64,000 nucleotides of DNA, taken from NCBI GenBank assembly GCA_030704615.1, contig CM060733.1, positions 14,198,001 through 14,262,000 of the forward strand, read 5' to 3'. Source of the stretch: Takakia lepidozioides. Its lineage: Eukaryota; Plantae; Bryophyta. The stretch's first letter is position 1. Each line of letters begins with the position of its first letter. The notes beneath the pieces were generated by a model, which worked only from the letters and a program-made list of their open reading frames with translations, was not told where the DNA came from and made no database searches. Shown in pieces: positions 32,988-48,015 of the stretch. Position numbers and translations under genes: made by a program.

Positions 32988-34489
32988 CCTGTCCTATCTG
33001 CGAGGCACAGATTTTCGTTTTACACTTGTCCTGCGAAGCTTTACAGAACGGTCTGGCCGTAGCAAGTGTCCCCCAACTGATTTCAAGCGTTACATCCGCT
33101 CCAAAGTATTCAGAATTTAAAATCGACCTAAGTTCTATCGGAATCCCTTACGGTAACAAAAACCAGTCTTCAACCTCTAGAACCTGAAGTCCGCAAATCA
33201 CCCGAACAAGACGAAATCCCACGGGTGGCCGCTTCTCCGCAAACGCAGCAGCCGTTGTAATTGACCTTGTGTGGAGCCTTAGTTTGAGGAGATGGCTACC
33301 AGAATCGCACCCCCTGCCTGTAACAAGCATCCGCACAGATGCTGCATGTGTGCAGGACAGTAATAAGAAACACCTACTTACAATCTCAAACTCCACGCTC
33401 TCTCTCTCTCCCTCGCTCATGCATTCTCGCACTCTCCCTCTTTCCCTCCCTTTTGTGCTATGTGAGCTGCGGACACAGATTCTCACTAGCAGGCTCGGCG
33501 CAGAGGTTTGGGTCCAAACCTATCTTGGTTCGGACCCACATTTGAATTACCGTGTTTTCATGATTGACAATCGCAGGATTCGCCAATTGATTGGGAAATT
33601 GGAAGATGACATATCTATCGTGATAGGGGGTCTATTTTGGGTGAGCAAAATGTAGAAAACGGAGACATCGATTGTGACGAGGATGACAATGACCACACGA
33701 CCATTGGCGTTAATGTGATATTGCTAGCTAGAAGAAGATCCAAACATAATAACAATATTGACTTCTTCCCAAGGGAGGGTAAATTATGGTGTCTCTTCAC
33801 CACAAGGGCTACTTGTCTTCCAGCTCAAAGGTGGACACCTTCATGACACACCGGACCGTGGTTTGAACCCACAACCACATCCAACGTGGTATGTGCCAAT
33901 TACCACTGGGCTACATGGTTGTCACTTCATTTTCATGGTGAGGGGTAGTGTCCCCTTTCTCAGCCTCCATGGCCTGTCATGTGAGGTCATGTTTTCCATT
34001 TTAATTTACTCTAGGCCTATCTCGATCGGGCCTTTGTTGAACTAGTAATGCACTTGTTGAGGGCATCATCGATCTCAGCACTTGCAACGAGGCAGTGATA
34101 TCACCACTCACTTGATTATCTCCATCTCCGTCTTGCAGATCTACAGGTTTCAGATTTTTATATATGAGGTAAGTTGCACGCGGGGGAAAGTTTCTCCCAA
34201 CAACACAAGCTTTCAAGAGAGTTACTCACAATCCTGATAAGAATATAGTGGGATTACTTATCTTGACGGTGAGGACCATCTTATGGGGATCTTATGCTCA
34301 GCACCACGAGCTGCCATGGTTGCAGAACTGCTTGGGGGATCCTAAGCCAAGTGCTCGAGTGGTTAACCTGGCCAAGCAAAGAGAAATCGCGGGCCTTACT
34401 CTTTTATACCGCCATCCTTTCGAGAGTACTCAAAACATGTACTGCTATAAGAATTTGTGGCTAAAGAAAGATTCTGGCCACCATCAGGA

Positions 34490-35290
34490 CTGCATTGAGC
34501 TATTCTAGAGTTCCATGCTCGTTCCATGCCGAAAATATAGTCAACCCAAATGTTTCCTTGGTAAGACACAAGCCACCACCATCTCAGGTAAGATATTCTT
34601 CGAGTTCTATCTCTAACAAATGCTAGCTCTGTGACATCATGCACCTGATGAAAGCCTGGAAGATTTTATTAAAACTCAAACATACATGAGTAAAACATCT
34701 CAAACATGAGAAAGAAACCTGGCTTCCGCAGGGGGCACTCATCAATGGCCGATGAGGCCACTCTATATGAAGGTGTCATCAGTAATCACAAAACAGAAAT
34801 AGCAGCAGTCAAGTTTTGAGAGGCAGAAGCATGCACTGGAGCTGATAAACCGCACCATATATTGTACTGCAAGCCTACATGTGACACATTACGGAACTAG
34901 TATTCGCGTAATATTCACCTCTGGTGCAAGTTCCGATTCAGGATAGACACAGTTTGTGAGCGTCTATCAAATGTGCAAAAACTTCATTTACACAACCAAG
35001 GGGAAACCCAACAGCTAGGGTGGCCACGAGGTAGAGATCAAGCATCTTATTTCAGCAAGGATGGAAAACAAAAACAATCGACACAAGTAGAAAGCACGGG
35101 CACTAGTTGTTAACACTTCCATTGAGAAGCTAACATGGTGCCCAACTACCCCACAACTATCAGCGTTAGATTAGTGTCTTCAATGCCCAATTGATATGAA
35201 CTCCCATGAAATAAGACCATTAGACTAGTGCACACGATTCTGGTTACCGAGCTTGTTATTCGAACTCTGACGCTGCAGTTTTCTAAATGT
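34490..35290. repeat. ~0.8-1 kb block duplicated in direct orientation at ~39800-40860 and ~46240-47280
   Basis: Shared ctaga(g/a)ttccatgc...tagtcaaccca, ggggcact(t/c)atca, gtcatcagtaa, gctaacatggtgccc and gtcttca(a/g)tgcccaa. Confidence 0.85.
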
Positions 35291-36133
35291 GACTGTCCTC
35301 ACTTATCCAAGGAAAATAAATGTTCTTAGAGTATCTCTCTGGAAGCGAAGAAGTCAGAAGAGAACTAAGGAAGCAAATGTGCCAATGCGCTCTCACTGTC
35401 AAAAAGATAGTTGGAAGGTTAGTTAAGTAGCTGACAAAAAAGATAATTGGATTCTGGCTGCGCGGTGCAATGCCCAATTGAAAGAGAGATTCCACAGAAG
35501 ACAAAGCGACCGGTAGTTTTGAGTCTTGATACAAGATCAGATACAAGCGATTTATTTATTGATAGCTCACTGCAGTAAAACGACTGCAGTCACTTATTTG
35601 AAGAGTATTTCATGACCTGCCCAACCCCATGCACGTCTCGACAAGGCACGATCGTGCCATGTTTTAGCTCTTCAGAGCTTGCTTGAAAATCGAAGTTCTA
35701 ACAATCTAGAATTGTTGGATCTAGATGCGGGGAAGTACACGCTCGTGTACAGCCTCACAAAGTCTACAACAAAATCTGGACCACCTTATTTCTATCCTAC
35801 GCAGTCTACACTAAAATCTAGTCCACCTCGTTGACAATCCTAGGACGGAACGGTGATGCTATCCCGCGGCAGGATTCAGCAGTCTACATCAAATCTAGAC
35901 CACCTTGTTGAAAATCCTGCGACGGAGCAGTGAATTAGCAGGATCCTCGCGTTCGCTTCCCTCGACCAGCTGCTTGTTCTGGCAGATCCAAGCGCGAAGC
36001 TCGGTTCCCATCTGCAATCTTCTCAATCACCATTTCCATTGAATGATTAAATCCACCTTTCCACGAGTTCGTTTAGAATCTCAAGCAACAAATTACTGAT
36101 CTCAACTAGATCTTGTAGCAATATTTGCACGCC

Positions 36134-37508
36134 TTACATATTAGCTGAATGAGATAGTACCCACCTTGCTGGTATGGAGGCTTCTATGCCAGCTGCGCAG
36201 GCCACCTCTTCGATGTCGAAGGGTAAGTTACGGTCAAACTCCTTCATAGCGTGCTTGTCCCCCTCCACCCTCTTCAGATGTGCCACGTGGTGTGATGCAC
36301 AGCGGACTTTCTCACCCTGCAATTACAGTAAATTATCAGAATTCTGCATCTTTCTGCATGTCAAGTGACGATTTCTCCGAACTCTACCGACCCCTCAAAT
36401 TTATCGTCGATAACCGGCATCAGAAACCAAGAGAACTTTCGATGAATCGGCAGCACAAACTCACCTCATTCTCGACGCAACGTTCGAGGAAGACCACAGC
36501 ACATGCATCGTTGGACTTAATCGCCTGCTGATGAAGATCATTTACCTTCTTGTACGCCACCTGTGAACACTCAACGAACCAGCCAATATCAACAAACAGA
36601 ACCATCTTCGTCTTGTTTATGTACAAAAATAGCGCCAAATGACTGTACTTTGTGAACGTACCTTGCATACTGCCAGCATCTCGCTGAAACCGTACAGCAG
36701 ATCAGACTGGTCCCTCTGTGAGAAGCGGTCGGAAGAGATCTGAGCAACAGACCCAATTTCCACCCTCGCACCGCGTTTGGCGAGAAACTCTATGACCCTC
36801 CAGCTATCGTTGATTTCGATTTGGGATTTAATCTGTTGGTAACAACATCACCAAACGTTAAGGTGAGATTTTGAACTCTAGCTAAAATGATAACACTTAC
36901 GCTTTGCAAATCAGCAGGATGAACTGATTACCTTGCAGTACAAGGCCACCCCGGGAAGCGCTACATTGTCATGGCTGAAGAAAGCCGATGCAGCAGCAAA
37001 AAGTGCTGCGGTATTGGCGTGATATCTGCAAGACGAGCCAAATGTCATTAGTGGACGAGTTCAACACAAAACTCGTCTTCCAACAGCCACCTGCATATAT
37101 GTATCCGGACGGGACGGTGACAATGCAAGAAATCACTTGAGATAGTGGGCCTTGAACGCACGCAATGCACTTATTGAGGGCGTTGTCGATCTCAGCGCTT
37201 GCTTGCGGAATGCGCGCCAATGAGGCACTCACATCACCCACTCTTACGCTCTTGATCTGCTCCATCTCCTTCTTGATCTGGTCCAGATTTTTCTGTTAAT
37301 TAGTAACGCAAGTTAAATGTTCCGATCGATATCTGCACAGTCTACATAAGAAAACAGAGTCACTTAAAGCTGCACTTGCTGAACATCAACTGGTCTCGAT
37401 TCTAGCTGGAGCCGAGAACTATAATATAAAATTTCACGTTCGTGACTGTAGCGGGCTGTTTACCTCCTCCGCACAAGGGAAGTCCGCGCCTCCAGCACGA
37501 AAGGCCAT
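36134..37508 (-). CDS. Divergent ferritin-like protein, copy A
   Basis: Exons 37464-37508, 37162-37277, 36932-37025, 36662-36832, 36465-36560 and 36134/36165-36316 (possible further exon from 36011). Motifs EE|IKKE, SLAR, FFSHDNVALPGVA, KRGARV, DLH..A...ND, HVAHLKRV, FDRNL. Confidence 0.82.
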
Positions 37509-38149
37509 TGTTTCCGGAAGTGTTGATAAATCTGTACGCTTACCTTCGAATGTGCACAACTTACTCAGAAGACCCAGTAACCAAACAATGCGAACTTTTG
37601 AATCGCTTTCTTTCTGTACTAACTAAAATTCTTGCAGCTGCGAAAGCAATGAACACAGGATAACTCACTCACTCACAGTCGATTGAGAAATGTCGCTACC
37701 GAGGTCTTGAGACAGATGCAGGTGAAGAGCACGAAGAAGGATTGTGAGATAACCAGAGAGAGATGGGGGTATGTATAGGGCTGGAACTGCGAGTAGAGCA
37801 GGGCTGCACACCCCCCACGCACTCCTCCCACGCAGTCAAGTGCGAGAGACCTGCACTTGCCCGAGCAGCCGCGGCATGCCACCCCATATGTCCACCTCGC
37901 ACTTGTGTGGCCCTGCATGCACTGCGGTTCACCACCAGTAATTCTGATCGTTTACGTTTTTATGTACTTTTTGTTTTTTTTAATGTACATTTGCTAGCCA
38001 TTTGTCTTAAAACTTCTACGTTTCTATCTAAATTTATTTGATATTATTTGATTTAGGAATTTACATGGCTGATGTAAGGTTATTTTTTCCTTACTTAATA
38101 AAATTTATCAGGGCTACAATCGCCCTGTTCACTATTTTAAGAAAAACCT

Positions 38150-38647
38150 AACAGTTAGTATCTCAGTTGGTAAAGTACACTGAGTGCCATCCGGATGACC
38201 CTGGGGTCAAATCCTGCTACTTGACGGGTGTGGTACACTCTTCTCCCCCTTCCCTGCGCAGGTGTCGCATCAGAAAGCCTTACGGCGAGGTTACTGAGAG
38301 GTTATTTTCTCCTCTCTCTATCAAGGGGCCTGATTCGTGAGCTGTCGATCCCAGGTGTTTCCCTTTAAGAAAAACATTTAAAAAAACAAAAAAAAAACCC
38401 AACAGTTGGTAGCTTACTGCACTTATTGCCACCCAGATGGTTCTGGGGTCAAATCTTGCTACCTGGATAGCTATGGTATGTTCTGGGCGGTGTCCCATGC
38501 GTAAGCCTTCATGGCGAGGTTACTGTGAAAGAGGTTATTTTTCCGCTCACTATTAACTAAGGGGCCCGATTTGTGAGCTGTCGCTCCCAGGTGTTTCCCT
38601 TTTTTAAAAAAACAAAAAAAAAACAAAAATTACTTAAAAAAAAAAAA
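38150..38647 (+). mobile_element. Two tandem tRNA-derived SINE copies with A-tails
   Basis: A-box-like tatctcagttgg, B-box-like ggggtcaaatcc, shared body ending gtgagctgtcg.tcccaggtgtttccct, then A-rich tails. Copies ~38150-38397 and ~38398-38647. Confidence 0.8.
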
Positions 38648-41600
38648 GGGGGGACGGAGCATGATGAGGTCAGATGGGATCAGGGATCAACTCCAAGAAA
38701 ATCCTCAGCACTGGACTCATCACTGATCAAAGTATCGTGGAGACAGCAGCAATAGACTTCAGCCTCATTTTGTGTAATTAGGTACCGTGGTTAGTCCGGC
38801 CCAAGTGTGAGAAGAGAGATAATTCCCTGTCCATCTTAGTTTCCCCCACTAAGTTCACTTTGCAACAGTATAATTCTGTCTGCGAGGGAGAACTTCCGTA
38901 TGCAACTTGGTATTCTCTTCCTCGCTCTGGCAAGAATACACTGCCCCTTCCGTTCAACTATGATACGAGAACCAAGTTGCAAAGAAAATGTTGCTTCAGC
39001 AAGATTTATACCTTGAAATGTTGCTGCAGCTCAAATTACAATTGACACTATTGAAGTTTGTGTCACCACTTGCAAAAGCCATGAGGTTTATCACAGCATA
39101 CACCCACTTGGAAGTGGGGACCAATAAACACACCTCCGCATCTGCACATCATGAGCGTCTATCGCCTCTAATAACAATGTTCACAAGTCATTTGAACCCG
39201 TTTGCACTTCACCGTTGCGCCATCGGTTGTACTTATCTAGACCAATAAAAGCTATGATGGAGTCGAACGAACGAACCCAGTATAAAATTAAGAAGTCCTT
39301 GTTGCACAAGCTATGCAGCGTTGGTCGTCGAGAAGGCTGCCATACGAACATCTTGCTGTAACTAGCCCTTTTGTTGGATTTAACCCTCAAGTAGCAACCG
39401 CTGTGTCCATCTCGTGACTAGAACCGCGTTCAAGAGCATCTCTTCTAAGAGTACTCCTCGTGTGATGAATTCAAGGATCGATGCGCTAGTCATGAGTAAT
39501 TCTGAACTAAAATCAATCAGATCAGATCATGTACACATTTATGTACACGTAGTATTCAAATTAGTAGTAATGACACAGAAATTCAGAAACAAGAGCACAT
39601 GTATGGTACACAGCTAAGGGCAGTAGTTCTCAGCACCTGGAACTAAGGATAGATCTATGGCAGAGAATGTCATGCAAGATCTTAGAGGTAGCACAAACAT
39701 GTCTTCCCCTCCGCCGGGTATCTCAGTCGATTGCTTGATCAAAGCCCAAAAAGGTTACTACTTAGGAACCGCTCTGGACAGTAGAGCCAATGCAGGAATT
39801 CTCCAAGTTAGTAGAGGCCAGCAAGGTCTAAACCCGCCACTTATAAGGAGCTGCCTATTACAATCTGCCCATTACCTTCAGCTTAATTACTGCGCCATAC
39901 ATATTTAGTTATAGGTCCCACCTCTAGAAAGCCTTCTTGATTAGTATATTAGATACTTATTAACTACCGTACGTACCAATGACTTTCGTCTAATAAAAAA
40001 GAATTCAAGATACTCAAGATTAGGTGATTCTCACCTAGTGAGTAATCTAGAATTCCATGCTAAAAGCTTAGTCAACCCAGGTCCCATTCCCTCGTGAGAC
40101 AAAAGCTGCCGCCATCTTGAGCAGGTAAAAGGGACTCCAAATTACGCTATAGCTTTGCACTGTGATAGTATGCAGCTCGCATTGACGTGTGCCAGAATTC
40201 GCATACATGGGGCACTTATCATCGCCCAACATTTGAGGCTACTCTTGGGTGTCTTCAGTAATCACAACATGTAATTGGGCGAGGAAAATACCAGCCATCA
40301 AGTTATGAGACCTGCAGAAGCACTAGAGCCAAGACTATATTAGTGTAGACCGTAAGCTGCAGTCCATCCTCCATGCAAAACAGTATAGACCTGGTTATTT
40401 CACCTGAGCCATATACTAGTTTCTAGGATTTGGGATAGTAGCCAGCGATTATCATGAGTGTCTATCTGAAAATGTGCTAAAACTTCATAATATAACCATG
40501 GGGAACCCCTACAGAATGTGGACTAGGGGGCTAGAGAGCAACCCTGTCAGCTATATATCGCCAAGGAAACGTTAAAACAATTGACACAAGGCCACTAGAA
40601 AGAGCTGGCCCACTTGTTACCTTCTTGTTACTTCACTTACTTCCACTTCCCCATCAAAAGCTAACATGGTGCCCAACTATTTTCTATAGAAATATTTTCT
40701 ATAGTTAGTTAACTTATAAAGATTAGTATACAAAGTGTAAATGTACCGAGCCCCGTCTTCAGTGCCCAATATGAACTTTCCATGAAATGAGACACTCTAG
40801 AGCCTTTTGAGCGTGATTCTTGTTACATGAACTTCAGCATTTTCAGATGTGAGTGTCCATACTTCTGAGGTGATAATTCTTGTGTATCGCTAGCATACAC
40901 GAGGCATACACTTTCAAACTCCAGCTGTTCAGTTCCAGCAATAGTTCAAGAATAGTTGAAAAGATAGTTGAAGCGGAGATTGTAAACAGACGAGAAACAG
41001 GCCATTCGTAAAATCGATGTATTTATGTAGAGCTCACTGCAGTAAGCAATTACAGTCACTTTGAAGAGTATTATGACCTGCCTACAACCCAAAAACCAAG
41101 TGCACTAAAGCTGTGAACAAGACACCCGATCGGTACCTTGCTTTTACTCTGCAGAGATTGCTTGAAAATCTAGACATCTAGAATTGTTATATCTGGATGT
41201 TAGATCGAGGAAGCACTTTATCGTGCCTCTATTTACCCTCTCAACGTCTACAACAAAACCTAGACCACTTTATCTCTGTCCTGCGCATGCAGGATTCAAC
41301 AGTCTAAACTAAAGTTGTTGACAATCCTAGGACGGAGCATGAGTGATGCTATCCGCGCAGGACTCAGCAGTCTACATCAAAATCTAGACCACCTTATTGA
41401 AAATCCTGCGACGGAGCAGTGAATTAGCAGGATCCTCGCGTTCGCTTCCCTCGACCAGCTGCTTGTTCTGGCAAATCCAAGCGCGAAGCTCGGTTCCCAT
41501 CTGCAATCTGCTCAATCACCATTTCCATTGAATGATTAAATCCACCTTTCCACGAGTTCGTTTAGAATCTCAAGCAAGAAATTACTGATCTCAACTAGAT

Positions 41601-41649
41601 CTTGTAGCAATATGTGCACGCCTTATACATTTGCCGAATGAGATAGTAC

Positions 41650-42992
41650 CTACCTTGCTGGTATGGATGCTTCTATGCCAGCTGCGCAGGCCAACTCTTC
41701 GATGAGGAAAGGTAAGTTACGGTCAAACTCCTTCATAGCGTGCTTGTCCCCCTCCACCCTCTTCAGATGTGCCACCTGGTGTGATGCACAGCGGACTTTC
41801 TCACCCTGCAATTACAGTTAATTATCAGAATTCTGCATCTTTCTGCATGTCAAGTGACGATTTCTCCGAACTCTACCGACCCCCAAAATTTGTCTTCGAT
41901 AACCGGCATCAGAAACCAAGAGAACTATTCGATGAATCGGCAGCACAAACTCACCTCATTCTTGACGCAACGTGCCAGGAAGACCTCAGCACATGCATCG
42001 TTAACCTTGGCCGCCCGCTGAAGAAGATCATTGGCCTTCTTGTACCCCACCTGTGAACACTCACGAACCAGCCAGTATCAACAGATAGTACCCATATCAG
42101 TGTCTTATGTACAATTGTCTACCAAAATAGCGCCAAATAACTTCATACAAGTTGTTGACGTACCTTGCTTACTGCCAGAAACTCGCTGAAACCGTACAGC
42201 AGATCAGACTGGTCCCTCTGTGAGAAGTGCTCGGCAGAGATCTGAGCAACAGACCCAATTTCCACCCTCGCACCGCGTTTGACGAGAAAGTCTATGACCC
42301 TCCAGCTATCGTTGATTTCGATTTGGGATTTGATCTGTTGGTAACAACATCGCCAAATGTTAAGGTGAGATTTTGAGCTCTATCTAAAATGATAACACTT
42401 CCGCTTTGCCAAATCTGTAGGCTGAACTAATTACCTTGCAGTACAAGGCCACCCCGGGAAGCGCTACATTGTCATGGCTGAAGAAAGCCGATGCAGCAGC
42501 AAAAAGTGCTCCGGTATTGGCGTGATATCTGCAAGACGAGTCAAATGTCACGAGTTCAACACAAAACTCGTCTTCCAACAGCCACCTGCATATATAGGGA
42601 CGGGACAGGGACAATGCAAGAAATCAAGAGATAGTGGGCCTTGACGCACGCAATGCACTTGTTGAGGGCGTCGTCGATCTCAGCGCTTGCTTGCGGAATG
42701 CGCGCCAATGAGGCACTCGCATCACCCACTCTAACGCCCTTGATCTGCTCCATCTCCTTCTTGATCTGCTTCAGAATTTAATTTTAATTTCACGCAAGTC
42801 ATTTGAATGTTTCGATCAGCACTGCTGACCAATATAACAGTGCTCAAACAGAGTCCCTGGATTACTATGAACTAGTATTCTATCTAGGAAAAAAATACAA
42901 CGAAATGTCCATGTTCGACGCTGCAGCGGTTTGTTTACCTCCTCCGCGTAAGGGAAGTTATCCTGAGCGACGTTTCCGCCCCGAGTGGCCAT
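41650..42992 (-). CDS. Divergent ferritin-like protein, copy B
   Basis: Same exon structure; starts MATRGGNVAQDNFPYAEE|IKKEMEQIKG; no internal stops in the spliced frame. Confidence 0.8.
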
Positions 42993-43234
42993 TCTTGCAG
43001 AAGAGTAGATAGATCTGCGAATGTGCAAAGCCCAATCAGAAGCCCTTTTAACCAAACAATGTGAAATCATTTTTTGCTCTCTATATATACTAACATTCTT
43101 CAAAGCTGGGCACCAACATAATCTGAAACACGTTATCTGCATGAGAACTCACTCTGTCGCTTGAAGAATAACACTTGAGGCTTTCAGGAACATCTGACAG
43201 CGAAGAAGAGTTTGTGAGATAAACAAAGCCGGAT

Positions 43235-43720
43235 CGAGATATATATAGGCCTGCAAAGTAGAAGCCGAGGATGAGTTAAATCGTAAAAAGACTGCTGGTG
43301 CTGGAATCGCACTGCTCACGTTCCTCCGCATGCCTCCAAGGGAGTCGCTTTGCGTCACTCGTTGTAGCCACCAGCAGCCGCCTCGCAGCCACGTGTCGAT
43401 TCTGCGCACGTGGAGAGTTGTAGGCCTTCCTTACTGGATCGAGAAAATTGTTCACCCGGTTTAAACTCTCTCAGAGTTCTCAGCATTTTTGGGTGATGAC
43501 GTTGGACTGCAACGTACGTAATAGCAAGTAAATCTAGTAAGAATGGCCAGAATTACTGGTGGTAAACCACGGTGCATGCAGGGCCACACGCGTGCGAGGT
43601 GGACACATGGGGTGGCATGCCGCGGCAAGTGCAGGTCTCTCGCACTTGACTGCGTGGGAGGAGTGCGTGGGGGGTGTGCAGCCCTGCTCTACTCGCAGTT
43701 CCAGCCCTATACATACCCCC
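43235..43720. promoter_or_regulatory. Divergent promoter region between ferritin-like copies B and C with ABRE/G-box, RY and TATA-like motifs
   Basis: gccacgtgtc (~43388), gcacgtgg (~43406), catgca (~43575), cacgcgtg (~43587); TATA-like tatatata (~43240, -) and tatacata (~43708, +), each followed by a non-coding exon ending in GTGAGT or a similar donor. Confidence 0.55.
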
Positions 43721-43966
43721 ATCTCTCTCTGGTTATCTCACAATCCTTCTTCGTGCTCTTCACCTGCATCAAGACCTCGGTAGCGACATTTCTCAATCGA
43801 CTGTGAGTGAGTGAGTTATCCTGTGTTCATTGCTTTCGCAGCTGCAAGAATTTCAGTCAGTACAGAGAGAGCGATTAAAGTTCGCATTGTTTGATTACTG
43901 GGTCTTCTGAGTAAGTTGTGCACATTCGCAGGTAAGCGTACAGATTTATCAACACTTCCAGAAACA

Positions 43967-45346
43967 ATGGCCTTTCGTAATGGTGGAGGCATGGCGGACT
44001 TCCCTTGCGCGGAGGAGGTAAACAGCTCGCTACAGTCGCGAACATGAAATTTTTATAATATAGTTCTCGGCCCCAGCTTGAATCGAAACCAGTTGACGTT
44101 CAGCTAGTGCTTGAGTGACTCTGTTTTCTTATGTAGACTGTGGTGATATCGATCGGAACACTTGGACTTGCGTAACTAACACTAAATTTTGGAGCAGATC
44201 AAGAAGGAGATGGAGCAGATCAAGAGCGTAAGAGTGGGTGATGTGAGTGCCTCGTTGGCGCGCATTCCGCAAGCAAGCGCTGAGATCGACGACGCCCTCA
44301 TGAAGTGCATGGCGTGCGTTAATCAAAGGCCCACTAGTTATTTCTTGATTTCTTCCATTGTACCTAGTATGATCCCTTTCCTATAAACTTCGCTCTTGAA
44401 GACGATCTGAACTGAACTCTTGGGACGAATGACATTTGGCTTGTCTTGCAGATATCACTGCAACAGCGCAGCACTTTTTGCTGCGGGATCGGCTTTCTTC
44501 AGCCATGACAATGTCGCGCTTCCCGGGGTGGCCTTGTACTGCAAGGTAAAAGGTCCAGCCTACTGATTTGGCAAAGCGTACGTAGGTGAAGTGTTATTTT
44601 AGCTCTCAAAATCTCACCTCAACATCGGATATTGTTGTTACCAACAGATCAGATCCCAAGTCGAACTCAACGATAGCTGGAGGGTCATCGACTTTCTCGC
44701 CAAACGCGGTGCGAGGGTGGAAATTGGGCCTGTTGCTCAGATCTCTTCCGACCACTTCTCACAGAAGGATCAGTCTGATGTGCTGTACGGTTTCAGCGTG
44801 ATGCTGGCAGTAAGCAAGGTACGTTAACAACTTGTATGAAGTTTTGGTAGACAATTGTACATGAGATATTGATATGGGTTTTATCTGTTAATATTGGCTG
44901 GTTCGTGAGTGTTCAACAGGTGGGGTATAAGAAGGCGAATGATCTTCTTATGCGGGCGATGAAGTGCAACGATGCATGTGCTGAGGTCTTCCTCGCATGT
45001 TGCGTCAAGAATGAGGTGAGTTTATGCTGCCGATTCATCGAATAGTTCTCTTGGTTTCTGATGCCGGTTATCGAAGACAAATTTGAGGGGGACCGTAGAG
45101 TTCAGAGAAATCGTCACTTATGTAGAAAGATGCAGAATTTTGATAACTAGTTTACAATTGCAGTGTGAGAAAGTCCGCTGTGCATCCCACCACGTGGCAC
45201 ATCTGAAGAGGGTGGAGGGGGACAAGCACGCTATGAAGGAGTTTGATCGTAACTTACCCTTCTACATCGAAGAGGTGGCCTGCGCAGCTGGTATAGAAGC
45301 CTCCATACCAGCAAGGTGGGTACTATCTCATTCAGCTAATATGTAA
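43967..45346 (+). CDS. Divergent ferritin-like protein, copy C
   Basis: Same exon structure on the + strand; starts MAFRNGGGMADFPCAEE|IKKEMEQIKS; no internal stops in the spliced frame. Confidence 0.8.
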
Positions 45347-47759
45347 GGCGTGCAAATATTGCTACAAGATCTAGTTGAGATCAGTAATTTGTTGCTTGAG
45401 ATTCTAAACGAACTCGTGGAAAGGTGGATTTAATCATTCAATAAAAATGGGGATTGAGCAGATTGCAGATGGGAACCGAGCTTCGCGCTTGGATCTGCCA
45501 GAACAAGCAGCTGGTCGAGGGAAGCGAACGCGAGGATCCTGCTAATTCACTGCTCCGTCGTAGGGTGTTCAACAAGGTGGTCTAGATTTTGCTGTAGACT
45601 GCTGAATCCTGCGCGGGATAGCATCACTGCTCCGTCCCAGGATTGTCAACGAGGTGGACTAGATTTTAGTGTAGACTGCGTAGGATAGAAACAAGGTGGT
45701 CCAGATTTTGTTGTAGATTTGTGAGGCTTTACACGATCGTGTACTTCCCCGCATCCAGATCCAACAATTCTAGATTGTTAAGACTTAGGTTTTCAAGCAA
45801 GCTCTGAAGAGCTAAAACATGGCACGATCGTGCCTTGTCTATTTCAAATAAGTGACTGCAGTCGTTTTGACTGCAGTGAGCAATACATAAATAAATCGCT
45901 TGTAAATCGTCTATCAAAACTGTGATTACTGGTCGCTTTGTCTTCTACGGAATCTCTGTTTCAGTGGGCGTGATGCCCAATGTGTGGGGCTTGCACCGCG
46001 CAGCCAGAATCGAATATTTTTTTCCCAACTATTAATCAACTATCTTTTCTATGTCAAAGGGAGTGCATTGCATTGCTACCTCATTTCTCTTCTGTACAAC
46101 CTGATTCGCTTCCCTCTGGCCATTCAGGCAGGCAAAAGGACTCACACTGGCTCTCACCTAAGACGTTAGTGGAGCCCCAGTAGATTTTGCCTCAGAGCCC
46201 TTGGAAAAAGGTGACTAGGAACAGCTCTGGACTACAGCCAATGGAGTTCTCCCAGTAAGTAGCAGCACCTAATTAAACCCACCAGTGTAAAAAAGCGCTA
46301 CAGGTTACTCCAATTAGTGATGCCCCTTCCCATTACCATCCACCCACCTTCAGCTTACATCATACATAGTTGACTGTGGTACCAATGACTTCCTCTGATA
46401 AAAGGAATTCTTTGCTCAAGATTAGGTGATTCTCACCTCTACTTTTCTAGAATTCCATGCAAATAAAATTTAGTCAACCCAAATGTTCCCTGGTAGAGAC
46501 AAGGCACCACCATCTCAGGTAAAACAGTCTTTTGAGTCCTATGTCTAACAAATGCTGGCACATGCACTTGATGAAACCCTAGAGGATATTATTAATACCC
46601 AAAAAGATTGCATTGTATTTATACATGAGTAAACCATCTCAAACTTGAGAACGAAACCTGGCTCCACATGGGGCACTTATCAATGGCCAATGAGGCCACT
46701 CTATGAAGGTGTCATCAGTAACCACAAAACATCAATACCAGCAGTCAAGTTTTGAGATGTAGAAGCACTGGAGCTTATAAACCGCACCATACGTACTGCA
46801 AGCCTACATGTGACACATTACGGAACTAGTATTCGCGTAATATTCGCCTCTGGTGCAAGTTCCGATTCGGGATGAAGACAGAGTTTGTTAGCGTCTATCA
46901 AATTTATGTGCAAATACTTCATAATATACACAAGCAAGGGGAACCCCAACAGCTAGGGTGGCCATTGTGGGGTAGAGATCAAGCATCTTATTGCAGCAAG
47001 GATGGAAAACTAAAACAATCGACACCAAGCGAGTAGAAAGCGCTGGCACTAGTTGTTCACACTTTCAGAAGCTAACATGGTGCCCTAGTTCTAAGGCCTT
47101 GATCCGAGATCACTATACACAACGCAAATGAACTGAGCCGATGTACCTCACTACTATCAGCGTTAGATCAGTGTCTTCAATGCCCAATTGATATGAATCC
47201 CCATGAAATAAGACCATTAGAGCATTGATTTTTGTTACCGAACTTGCTGTAGACGGGAACTCTGCCGCAGTTCTCCTGATGTGACCCAAGCACCAGCGTC
47301 CGAGGCTTGCGGTTTGGGACATCTCAACGCTACAAAACAAAACAAAACATACGTCTAGCTTCATATATTGACTGGGGTAGTTTGTGCCGTTGGCCTAAGT
47401 GTCCACGTGAAAGATCTTATATGTATCCCAGTGCGTCATATGCTGAGGCCACCTCTAGGGTAGCATGTGCCTTTGGCCCATGTATGAGTAGTTGAAATCT
47501 AAGACCAAGTGCAATTTCCTATGTATCCCCATTCGTCTCCTATGTCGAGGCCCAAGTGCTACCTCTAGTGTAGCCTATGCCGTTGGCCCATGTGTGAAGA
47601 ATTGAAATCTAACTCCCATGTAGAGGCCCAAGTGTCCAATGTCATATAACTTGCCCAAATGCAATCTCCTATGTATCCAAGTACGTCTCCCATGTCAAGG
47701 CCCAATTTATTTTTTTCCATTATTAATTTATTGAGTAATAATATATCCATTCATTGTTG

Positions 47760-48015
47760 ATATATCTCCCGTCAAGGCTCCTAGGAAACTTCCCCTTTGC
47801 TATTTTTTGCGAGTTTCCAGCGACCCAAAGTACTTTGAAATTCCACATCACCGCAGGTCCAAAAGTCATGAGACCAAGCCCGTGCACCCCTCCCCGCCCC
47901 CTCCTTGCAGAGGGCTTACCAACGGCACCAAGCACCTGCGCCGCTGGCCCCGCGGTTTGGGAGATCTCAACGACGCTACAAAACAAAACAAGCGTATCGC
48001 TTCATGTATTGATAG
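47760..48015 (+). repeat. Dispersed repeat, also at ~60070-60400 and partially at 47285-47370
   Basis: Shared cgacccaaagtactt.gaaattccacatc, catgagaccaagcc.gtgcac, gagggctt.ccaacggcaccaagcacc and gctacaaaacaaaac. Confidence 0.8.

What the first reader, a model, noticed from the sequence alone, without database searches (positions are those of the whole stretch)
36134..45346. Three-gene cluster of non-canonical ferritins with a rewired metal centre and no plastid transit peptide
Seen: the spliced proteins align by eye almost gap-free to plant ferritin, from the extension peptide (FPCAEE|IKKE...SLAR) through helix D. The ATG lies only 15-18 codons before IKKE, so there is no transit peptide. 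In human H-chain numbering the ferroxidase ligands appear as E27>H, Y34>F, E61>I, E62 kept, H65>D, E107>C/S and Q141>E. This is a reciprocal His/acid swap plus a new Glu, not simple loss. It is shared by all three open copies. The proteins are Cys-rich with a C-terminal extension. Known: plant ferritins are normally organelle-targeted with a conserved ferroxidase site. Inference: a cytosolic ferritin-fold family with another metal, chemistry or structural role. The ORF track misses it because the exons are short.
Basis: partly seen in the sequence, partly recalled or inferred. Interest (0 to 1): 0.85.

Follow-up and report, generated by a model that had tools for sequence, protein, structure and literature searches.

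The report
Tailed, ferroxidase-less ferritin relatives in moss
Three intact, transcribed neighbouring genes encode a ferritin-shaped protein that has lost the iron-oxidising site and the plastid-targeting peptide and has gained a conserved 55-60-residue tail; I found the same family only in mosses and a few land-dwelling green algae, and found no study of it.

Summary
The window carries three paralogous genes of seven exons each (265, 268 and 267 aa): 35895-37508 (-), 41384-42992 (-) and 43967-45585 (+). All are open and use GT-AG introns. Spliced contigs from a run of the same species confirm five of the six junctions.

The genes belong to a distinct clade (100/100 support) found in Sphagnum, in unnamed transcripts and in trebouxiophyte algae. 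Every member tested matches Pfam Ferritin. A homologue 53% identical folds like soybean ferritin (Z 23.7), including the plant extension-peptide helix. Two intron positions are shared with a canonical plant ferritin gene. Homologue mRNAs have in-frame stops before the ATG, so the family has no transit peptide.

The "rewired centre" is only partly conserved. F34, E62 and D/E65 are shared across the family, H27 is almost confined to mosses, and E141 is unique to this genome.

My best reading is a cytosolic ferritin-fold protein that does not store iron. Its conserved tail would lie inside any cage it forms, as in the Artemia protein artemin. That function is inferred, not shown. Other notes of this scan report more copies elsewhere in this genome.

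The parts
35895..37508 (-). Copy 1 gene, ATG to stop; 7 coding exons, 265 aa
   Evidence: Exons 37508-37464, 37277-37162, 37025-36932, 36832-36662, 36560-36465, 36316-36165, 36018-35895. All introns are GT-AG and the frame is open. Intron positions and phases are identical to the annotated Sphagnum jensenii gene. Scores 348 bits against the family profile.
41384..42992 (-). Copy 2 gene, ATG to stop; 7 coding exons, 268 aa
   Evidence: Exons 42992-42939, 42765-42650, 42528-42435, 42334-42164, 42050-41955, 41805-41654, 41507-41384. A spliced contig of run X2 shows the joints 42334/42435 and 42528/42650. Scores 335 bits against the family profile.
43967..45585 (+). Copy 3 gene, ATG to stop; 7 coding exons, 267 aa; head-to-head with copy 2
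   Evidence: Exons 43967-44017, 44198-44313, 44452-44545, 44648-44818, 44920-45015, 45164-45315, 45462-45585. Run X2 shows the joint 45313/45460 (GT..AG, cut +2), and a loose end shows the exon 5/6 junction.
37464..37508 (-). Exon 1 of copy 1: the ATG, a short N-terminus and the start of the extension-peptide motif (FPCAEE)
   Evidence: There is no ATG between the upstream in-frame stop and this ATG. Sphagnum has an equivalent 42-nt first exon. The exon 1/2 junction is the only one not covered by RNA contigs.
36932..37025 (-). Exon 3 of copy 1: helix A with H27 and F34, and the conserved DNVALPG loop motif
   Evidence: The top four PDB matches are all ferritins (plant and Ulva), each at E about 1.
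36662..36832 (-). Exon 4 of copy 1: helix B with the Q60-x-E62-x-N64-D65 motif, the long loop, and helix C up to position 107 (Cys)
   Evidence: This exon was the query that retrieved the homologue family.
36165..36316 (-). Exon 6 of copy 1: the end of helix D, helix E (FDRNLPF) and the first part of the tail
   Evidence: Alignment. The donor at 36165|36164 is equivalent to the joint seen in copy 3.
35895..36018 (-).
   Evidence: The splice is seen in an RNA contig whose variants match copy 1. The sequence is collinear with all family members, including a chlorophyte alga.
42993..43966 (.). 974-nt divergent intergenic region between the ATGs of copies 2 and 3. About 420 nt on the copy 3 side is 96.5% identical to the region upstream of copy 1.
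   Evidence: A promoter function is inferred only.

Best explanation
These are three intact, expressed paralogues of a distinct, old offshoot of plant-type ferritin. The protein keeps the ferritin subunit fold: the plant extension-peptide helix, the four-helix bundle A-D and the short helix E. It lacks a plastid transit peptide, so it should stay in the cytosol.

It has lost the di-iron ferroxidase site. Only E62 of the seven canonical residues remains, and positions 61 and 107 are non-ligand residues that vary across the family, as does 141 outside this genome. The three-fold-channel carboxylates are not conserved either.

It carries a conserved tail of 55-60 residues after helix E. In every known 24-subunit ferritin the C-terminus points into the cavity. 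I therefore infer that any shell this protein forms holds its tails inside, leaving little room for an iron mineral. On that reading it works not as an iron store but as a ferritin-derived scaffold or protective protein, with the tail and the conserved inner-surface residues (Q60, E62, N64, D65) as the functional part. The nearest functional parallel is artemin of Artemia. A single metal ion bound by H27, E62 and D65 in the moss proteins remains possible.

Shown: gene structure, splicing, fold by homologue, residue changes, absence of a presequence, conservation of the tail. Inferred: location, oligomer, position of the tail, lack of iron storage, protective role.
For: - Gene models and open frames.
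- Spliced contigs in a run of the same species cover five of six junctions.
- Exon divergence of 6-9% against 15-19% in introns, and dN/dS of 0.52-0.65.
- The family was recovered from exon 4 and expanded to Sphagnum jensenii, S. magellanicum, unnamed transcripts, [Myrmecia] bisecta, Trebouxia and Asterochloris.
- All 17 members tested hit Pfam PF00210 and nothing else.
- The best solved relative of the Sphagnum member is soybean ferritin 3a68, E 3.4e-13.
- AlphaFold2 model of homologue P0009: pLDDT 83. Against 3a68 it gives VIA-align Z 23.7, rmsd 2.0 A over 193 residues, model residues 7-206.
- The family forms a 100/100 clade, separated from canonical ferritins by a long branch.
- Window proteins score 335-348 bits against the family profile and 85-97 bits against the canonical profile.
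- Intron positions are identical to the Sphagnum gene, and two of six coincide in position and phase with a Vanilla ferritin gene.
- Homologue mRNAs have in-frame stops before the ATG, and the N-termini are short.
- Ligand and channel columns. Tail conservation.
- Artemin's properties (24-mer, altered ferroxidase centre and three-fold channel, thiol-rich, C-terminal extension lining and entering the cavity, chaperone) come from PMC9742257.
Against: - Neither the oligomeric state nor the position of the tail was observed. The homodimer test gave no verdict, and the tail is modelled at pLDDT 56-71 only.
- The window's own joined proteins were not folded or searched in databases. Fold evidence comes from a homologue 53% identical.
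- The H27/E62/D65 trio is conserved in nearly all moss-type sequences, so a metal-dependent role cannot be dismissed.
- dN/dS of 0.5-0.65 among the three copies is only mild constraint.
- The run that holds the spliced contigs is labelled RNA only as a guess. One contig is a mosaic of paralogue variants, so it may come from another copy or strain.
- Cysteine richness, which matters for artemin's redox switch, is not shared across the family: the count ranges from 1 to 12 and no Cys is invariant.
- Nothing is known about when the genes are expressed.
Confidence: 0.6

Rival explanations
1. This is the first reader's view: a rewired metal centre. The swap E27>H with H65>D, plus E62 and, in this genome, E141 with C/S107, builds a new mono- or di-metal site. 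That site would give the protein a different catalytic or metal-sensing chemistry inside an otherwise ordinary ferritin.
For: Site A keeps one His and two carboxylates (H27, E62, D65) in all three copies, in both Sphagnum proteins and in five of six unnamed moss-type transcripts, as well as one Trebouxia protein. The bundle superposes on real ferritins at 1.3-2.0 A, so these side chains should still face each other; this follows from ferritin structure and was not measured.
Against: Position 27 is Q, S, T, M, P, A or N in the other family members. E141 is unique to this window. Position 107 differs even between the three copies (C, S, S). Y34, needed for the canonical reaction, is F nearly everywhere. 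Position 61 is hydrophobic. The entry-channel carboxylates 131/134 are not conserved.
Confidence: 0.2
2. The protein is an L-chain-like partner. It would be a catalytically silent subunit that co-assembles with canonical ferritin subunits and tunes mineralisation, as animal L chains do.
For: The fold and the extension-peptide helix are retained. Silent subunits are well known in animal ferritins (established knowledge).
Against: Canonical plant ferritins carry presequences of 53-71 residues and this family does not, so the two should sit in different compartments. A tail of 55-60 residues per subunit would crowd the cavity. The conserved helix-B positions 60 and 64 (invariant Q60, nearly invariant N64), at sites where ferritin L chains carry nucleation carboxylates (from memory of ferritin structure), are amides rather than acids.
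Confidence: 0.07
3. The genes are decaying or neutral duplicates: recent tandem copies of a ferritin relic with no function of their own.
For: dN/dS of 0.52-0.65 is only mildly below 1. For the c1-c2 pair the excess of synonymous change is not significant by my rough estimate from the counts. The surrounding DNA is rich in transposons.
Against: All three frames are open over 265-268 codons, and all 18 introns keep GT-AG. Exons diverge less than half as much as introns. Spliced transcripts exist. The family, tail included, is conserved from mosses to chlorophyte algae.
Confidence: 0.05

Closest known systems
Plant (plastid) ferritin, e.g. soybean SFER4 (PDB 3a68) and H-2 (6j4j)
   Same: It is the best sequence and structure match. 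Both have the plant-specific extension-peptide helix, helices A-E and the DNVAL(K/P)G loop motif. Two intron positions and phases are shared with a Vanilla ferritin gene.
   Different: This family has no transit peptide and keeps one of the seven ferroxidase-site residues. The three-fold-channel carboxylates are not conserved. It has an added conserved tail of 55-60 residues. Identity is 27-30%, and the family forms a separate 100/100 clade.
Artemin of Artemia (PDB 7RVB), a ferritin-derived diapause chaperone
   Same: Both are ferritin homologues with an altered ferroxidase centre and three-fold channel and with a long C-terminal extension. The copies in this genome and in Sphagnum are also thiol-rich (7-12 Cys). 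Both occur in organisms that survive drying (PMC9742257).
   Different: The origin is independent: this family descends from plant-type ferritin (extension-peptide helix, plant intron positions). The tail shows no detectable similarity to any solved chain. Cys richness is not shared across the family. Chaperone activity and 24-mer assembly are untested here.
Animal L-chain ferritin and atypical sponge ferritins
   Same: These too are ferritin subunits without a working ferroxidase centre (established knowledge; title and abstract of PMC8395497).
   Different: They have no C-terminal tail. L chains keep acidic nucleation residues and co-assemble with H chains in the same compartment.
Desiccation-related proteins with a 'ferritin-like' domain (PCC13-62 type, Pfam PF13668)
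   Same: They share the word ferritin and an expansion in lichen algae and drying-tolerant plants (PMC9434271).
   Different: They are a different family. None of the 17 members matches PF13668; all match PF00210 only. Papers about 'ferritin' in Trebouxia refer to secreted or PF13668 proteins.

Membership tests
Ferritin family (Pfam PF00210; ferritin subunit fold) | Significant match to the family profile | tested here: met
   All 17 full-length homologues pass the Pfam cut-off (33.8-37.8 bits for P0009 and P0004, against a cut-off of 24.5). The window's joined proteins score 85-97 bits against a local profile of canonical ferritins. Single exons alone do not pass.
Ferritin family (Pfam PF00210; ferritin subunit fold) | Four-helix bundle with a long B-C loop and a short fifth helix | tested here: met
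   AlphaFold2 model of homologue P0009 (53% identical to copy 1): Z 23.9 and rmsd 1.3 A over 174 residues to 6j4j; Z 23.7 over 193 residues to 3a68.
Canonical iron-storing (H-type or plant) ferritin | Ferroxidase-site residues E27, Y34, E61, E62, H65, E107, Q141 | tested here: not met
   The window copies have H, F, I/V, E, D, C/S, E. All eight canonical sequences in the same alignment have E, Y, E, E, H, E, Q.
Canonical iron-storing (H-type or plant) ferritin | Three-fold-channel carboxylates (131, 134) | tested here: inconclusive
   The family has a one-residue deletion here, so the columns are uncertain. Whichever way the gap is placed, the residues vary (V, F, S, G, C, D, E...) and are not conserved.
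Canonical iron-storing (H-type or plant) ferritin | N-terminal organelle presequence (plant type) | tested here: not met
   There are 9-12 residues before the extension-peptide motif, against 53-71. Two homologue mRNAs have upstream in-frame stops. The exon 1/2 junction of the window genes is not covered by RNA.
Canonical iron-storing (H-type or plant) ferritin | Plant extension-peptide helix | tested here: met
   The FP..EEI motif is present, and model helix 11-22 superposes on 3a68 from residue 7.
Canonical iron-storing (H-type or plant) ferritin | 24-subunit cage | tested here: inconclusive
   The homodimer test on P0009 gave no verdict (score 0.30 against a mark of 0.32). No larger assembly could be tested.
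Artemin-like ferritin-derived chaperone | Ferritin fold with an inactivated iron site and a C-terminal extension | tested here: met
   The tail is about 55-60 residues after FDR.LPF.
Artemin-like ferritin-derived chaperone | Common descent with artemin, or sequence similarity of the extension | tested here: not met
   The tail finds nothing in the PDB and only its own family in the protein database. The core groups with plant-type ferritins. Any resemblance is convergent.
Artemin-like ferritin-derived chaperone | Many conserved thiols (redox switch) | tested here: inconclusive
   The window copies have 7-12 Cys and Sphagnum has 10, but three members have only 1 and no Cys column is invariant.
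Artemin-like ferritin-derived chaperone | ATP-independent chaperone activity; abundance in the dry or dormant state | not testable with these tools
   This needs protein assays and expression data.
Desiccation-related protein, ferritin-like domain PF13668 | Match to PF13668 | tested here: not met
   No member matches it at E 0.01 or better.

The most novel reading that the evidence does not exclude
Mosses and land-dwelling or lichen-forming trebouxiophyte algae independently turned a plant-type ferritin into an artemin-like protein. It would be a cytosolic cage whose conserved C-terminal tails fill the cavity and which protects proteins or RNA during drying or oxidative stress, instead of storing iron. 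This would be a convergent second invention of the brine-shrimp diapause chaperone in green organisms that tolerate desiccation.
Probability: 0.2. Interest if true: 0.8.

Novelty: new variant of a known kind. Interest (0 to 1): 0.6.

Why it matters
Plant ferritins are treated as one uniform, organelle-targeted, iron-oxidising family (for example PMC7730656). This clade breaks three of those rules at once: it has no presequence, no ferroxidase site and an added conserved tail. Public databases label it simply as ferritin, so genome surveys of iron or oxidative-stress genes in bryophytes and lichen algae would count it as an iron store.

The named species that carry it (Sphagnum, Trebouxia, Asterochloris, [Myrmecia] bisecta) and this moss-like genome, where the gene is multiplied to at least three copies and probably six or more, point to a role tied to life on land without water control. 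It also offers a natural ferritin cage with a built-in internal peptide, which is of interest for cage engineering. None of the function is shown yet.

Tried and rejected
- Pfam on each exon gave no hits.
- Exon 4 against the PDB gave only spurious low-complexity matches to designed TIM barrels.
- Complex prediction on two copies of P0009 gave no verdict, so it counts neither for nor against assembly.
- The tail alone found nothing useful: ESM Atlas features scored at most 0.80, which is chance level; the PDB sequence search found nothing; the large protein search found only the family itself.
- No tRNA genes lie in 33000-48000.
- Seven full-text literature searches found no description of this clade. 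The 'ferritin' items in lichen-alga papers are secreted or PF13668 desiccation-related proteins, which are another family.
- An acceptor at 37293|37292, usable in copy 1 only, was rejected. The acceptor cag|ATCAAG is shared by all copies and matches the 116-nt exon 2 of Sphagnum.
- Joined step left out: the spliced proteins of this window have no reference, so they were not sent to any database search, structure prediction or complex prediction. They were joined only inside local scripts, from window coordinates. Database and fold work used exon references and full-length homologues.
Full report
**What is there.** The stretch holds three copies of one gene. Copies 1 and 2 lie on the minus strand and copy 3 on the plus strand, head-to-head with copy 2. 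The duplicated units are 83-86% identical over 2.1-2.6 kb, introns and flanks included.

Reading copy 1, I transferred its exon boundaries to the other copies through a genomic alignment. The result is three open seven-exon models with GT-AG at all 18 introns:
- Copy 1: 37508-37464, 37277-37162, 37025-36932, 36832-36662, 36560-36465, 36316-36165, 36018-35895 (265 aa).
- Copy 2: 42992-42939, 42765-42650, 42528-42435, 42334-42164, 42050-41955, 41805-41654, 41507-41384 (268 aa).
- Copy 3: 43967-44017, 44198-44313, 44452-44545, 44648-44818, 44920-45015, 45164-45315, 45462-45585 (267 aa).

An upstream acceptor usable only in copy 1 was dropped. I kept cag|ATCAAG, which all three copies share.

**Transcription and splicing.** Only two runs with the same species label were on offer, both kept as contigs and labelled RNA as a guess. 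Laid on 41300-45700, run X2 gave contigs that skip the introns exactly at my boundaries:
- 42334/42435 and 42528/42650 (CT..AC, i.e. GT..AG on the minus strand).
- 45313/45460 (GT..AG, cut +2).
- A strand-switching joint that is the exon 4/5 junction, laid across two paralogues.
- A loose end carrying the end of exon 5 in front of exon 6.

Five of the six junctions are therefore seen in intron-less contigs. Only exon 1/2 is not. The variants of the exon 6-7-3'UTR contigs all match copy 1. The exon 2-5 contig is a mosaic, so it comes from another paralogue, another strain or a chimeric assembly.

A seventh exon adds 41 residues.

**Is it under constraint?** Exons differ by 6-9% between copies and introns by 15-19%. 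dN/dS is 0.52-0.65. This is mild but real constraint for young duplicates. The deep conservation described below is the stronger argument.

**Relatives.** Single exons are too short for Pfam. Exon 3 finds only ferritins in the PDB, but at E about 1.

An exhaustive search with exon 4 found a 263-aa Sphagnum jensenii protein, P0004. From it, and then from an alignment, came the following:
- A S. magellanicum protein.
- Six unnamed proteins of 242-266 aa, most from transcript-like contigs of about 1 kb.
- Proteins of the trebouxiophyte algae [Myrmecia] bisecta (at least four), Trebouxia sp. and Asterochloris.

The next hits are canonical ferritins, at under 100 bits against 210-490 bits for the family.

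My seven-exon proteins align end to end with these proteins at 48-53% identity, through the last residue of the tail. They score 335-348 bits against a family profile and 85-97 bits against a canonical ferritin profile.

In a maximum-likelihood tree the family is a 100/100 clade on a long branch away from canonical ferritins. Its internal order is unresolved.

The annotated Sphagnum gene has the same seven exons, with the same intron positions and phases (exon sizes 42, 116, 94, 174, 96, 152, 118, against 45, 116, 94, 171, 96, 152, 124). This independently supports the models, the short first exon included. Two of the six introns coincide in alignment column and phase with introns of a canonical Vanilla ferritin gene. 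That points to descent from a plant-type ferritin gene rather than an import.

**Fold.** All 17 full-length members match Pfam Ferritin and nothing else. P0004's best solved relative is soybean ferritin 3a68, at E 3.4e-13.

The AlphaFold2 model of P0009 (the member closest to copy 1, 53%) has mean pLDDT 83. It superposes on soybean ferritins at Z 23.7-23.9, with rmsd 1.3-2.0 A over 174-193 residues, from model residue 7 to 206. This includes the plant extension-peptide helix. Residues 207-260, the tail, are modelled as short helices at pLDDT 56-71 and match nothing.

**The metal site.** In a joint alignment with eight canonical ferritins, the window copies read as follows:

| Position | Canonical | Window copies |
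|---|---|---|
| 27 | E | H |
| 34 | Y | F |
| 61 | E | I / I / V |
| 62 | E | E |
| 65 | H | D |
| 107 | E | C / S / S |
| 141 | Q | E |

Across the family the picture is different:
- F34 is nearly universal and Q60 is invariant.
- E62 and N64 are nearly invariant.
- Position 65 is D, or E in two members, in all but one.
- H27 holds in 10 of 11 moss-type sequences but in only one alga.
- Positions 61, 107 and 141 vary freely across the family, mostly among non-ligand residues; apart from the Glu at 141 in this window's copies, potential ligands are rare.

The second iron site is therefore gone in every member. The first site keeps a one-His, two-carboxylate make-up only in the mosses. The Glu at 141 is peculiar to this genome. 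The three-fold-channel carboxylates are not conserved either.

**Targeting.** Family members have 3-13 residues before the extension-peptide motif (one alga has 51). Full-length canonical ferritins in the same alignment have 53-71. Two homologue mRNA contigs have in-frame stops and no further ATG upstream of the start. For the window genes, the upstream frame closes before another ATG appears.

**The tail.** After helix E (FDR.LPF) come 55-60 residues with conserved motifs: E..IP.RL..G...RA, and a terminal R..FN.V followed by a hydrophobic residue. These are kept from mosses to chlorophytes. The tail has no detectable relative outside the family.

In known 24-subunit ferritins the C-terminus points into the cavity (established knowledge). 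By my own rough estimate, 24 such tails amount to about 150 kDa, or about 180 nm3, in a cavity of roughly 270 nm3. That would leave little space for mineral.

**Comparison with known systems.** The closest family by descent is plant ferritin, but three of its defining features were tested and not met. The closest system by design is artemin of Artemia. Artemin is a 24-mer ferritin homologue that cannot bind iron because its ferroxidase centre, nucleation site and three-fold channel are altered. It is thiol-rich, its C-terminal extension lines and enters the cavity, and it acts as a chaperone in dormant, drying-resistant cysts (PMC9742257).

The resemblance is one of design, not of lineage. One artemin feature, many thiols, is present here and in Sphagnum but not across the family.

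The 'ferritin-like' desiccation-related proteins of lichen algae are a different Pfam family. I found no paper on this clade in seven full-text searches. Public databases name its members ferritin, ferritin heavy chain or Ferritin/DPS domain protein.

**Verdict.** The gene ends needed correction. The interpretation 'cytosolic ferritin-fold family with a non-canonical role' stands. 'Rewired centre' is at best a moss-level feature.

The mechanism I commit to, with moderate confidence, is a ferritin-derived protein that does not store iron and whose conserved tail and inner surface carry the function. An artemin-like protective role is the most interesting reading still open, at about one in five.

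Earlier notes of this scan report further copies 15 kb upstream of the window and on another piece of the genome. I did not check those. That the genome is moss-like is also taken from such notes, not tested here.

**Limits.** The joined proteins of this window were used only in local scripts. No database search or structure prediction was run on them, because they have no reference.

Noticed in passing
window 34047-34085: A 39-nt fragment is 87% identical to the 3' end of exon 2 of copy 1 (37164-37202). It looks like a stray remnant of a further copy.
   Followed up: partly
window 37715-37861 and 43624-43770: A 147-nt stretch is exactly identical, in opposite orientation, upstream of copies 1 and 3. 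The roughly 420 nt upstream of these two copies differ by only 3.5%, against 17% in their introns. This suggests recent gene conversion or a constrained promoter or 5' UTR. The upstream region of copy 2 is unrelated.
   Followed up: partly
window 38164-38398 and 38403-38624: Two adjacent units of about 235 nt, 73% alike, lie between copies 1 and 2. No tRNA gene was found there. Their nature is unknown.
   Followed up: no
loci L001, L002 and L003 (homologue mRNA contigs): Full-length transcripts of family members occur in two JGI samples (3300034941, 3300012469) and one public run (SRR10920916). The source organisms are not named, so the true taxonomic range of the family is wider than the named species.
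   Followed up: no
[Myrmecia] bisecta proteins P0014, P0024 and P0029: All three are listed with the same longest-contig length (4,668,230 bases), so the family may be multiplied on one chromosome in this alga as well. P0027, listed with a different contig length (1,774,963), has a 51-residue N-terminal extension that could be a presequence.
   Followed up: no
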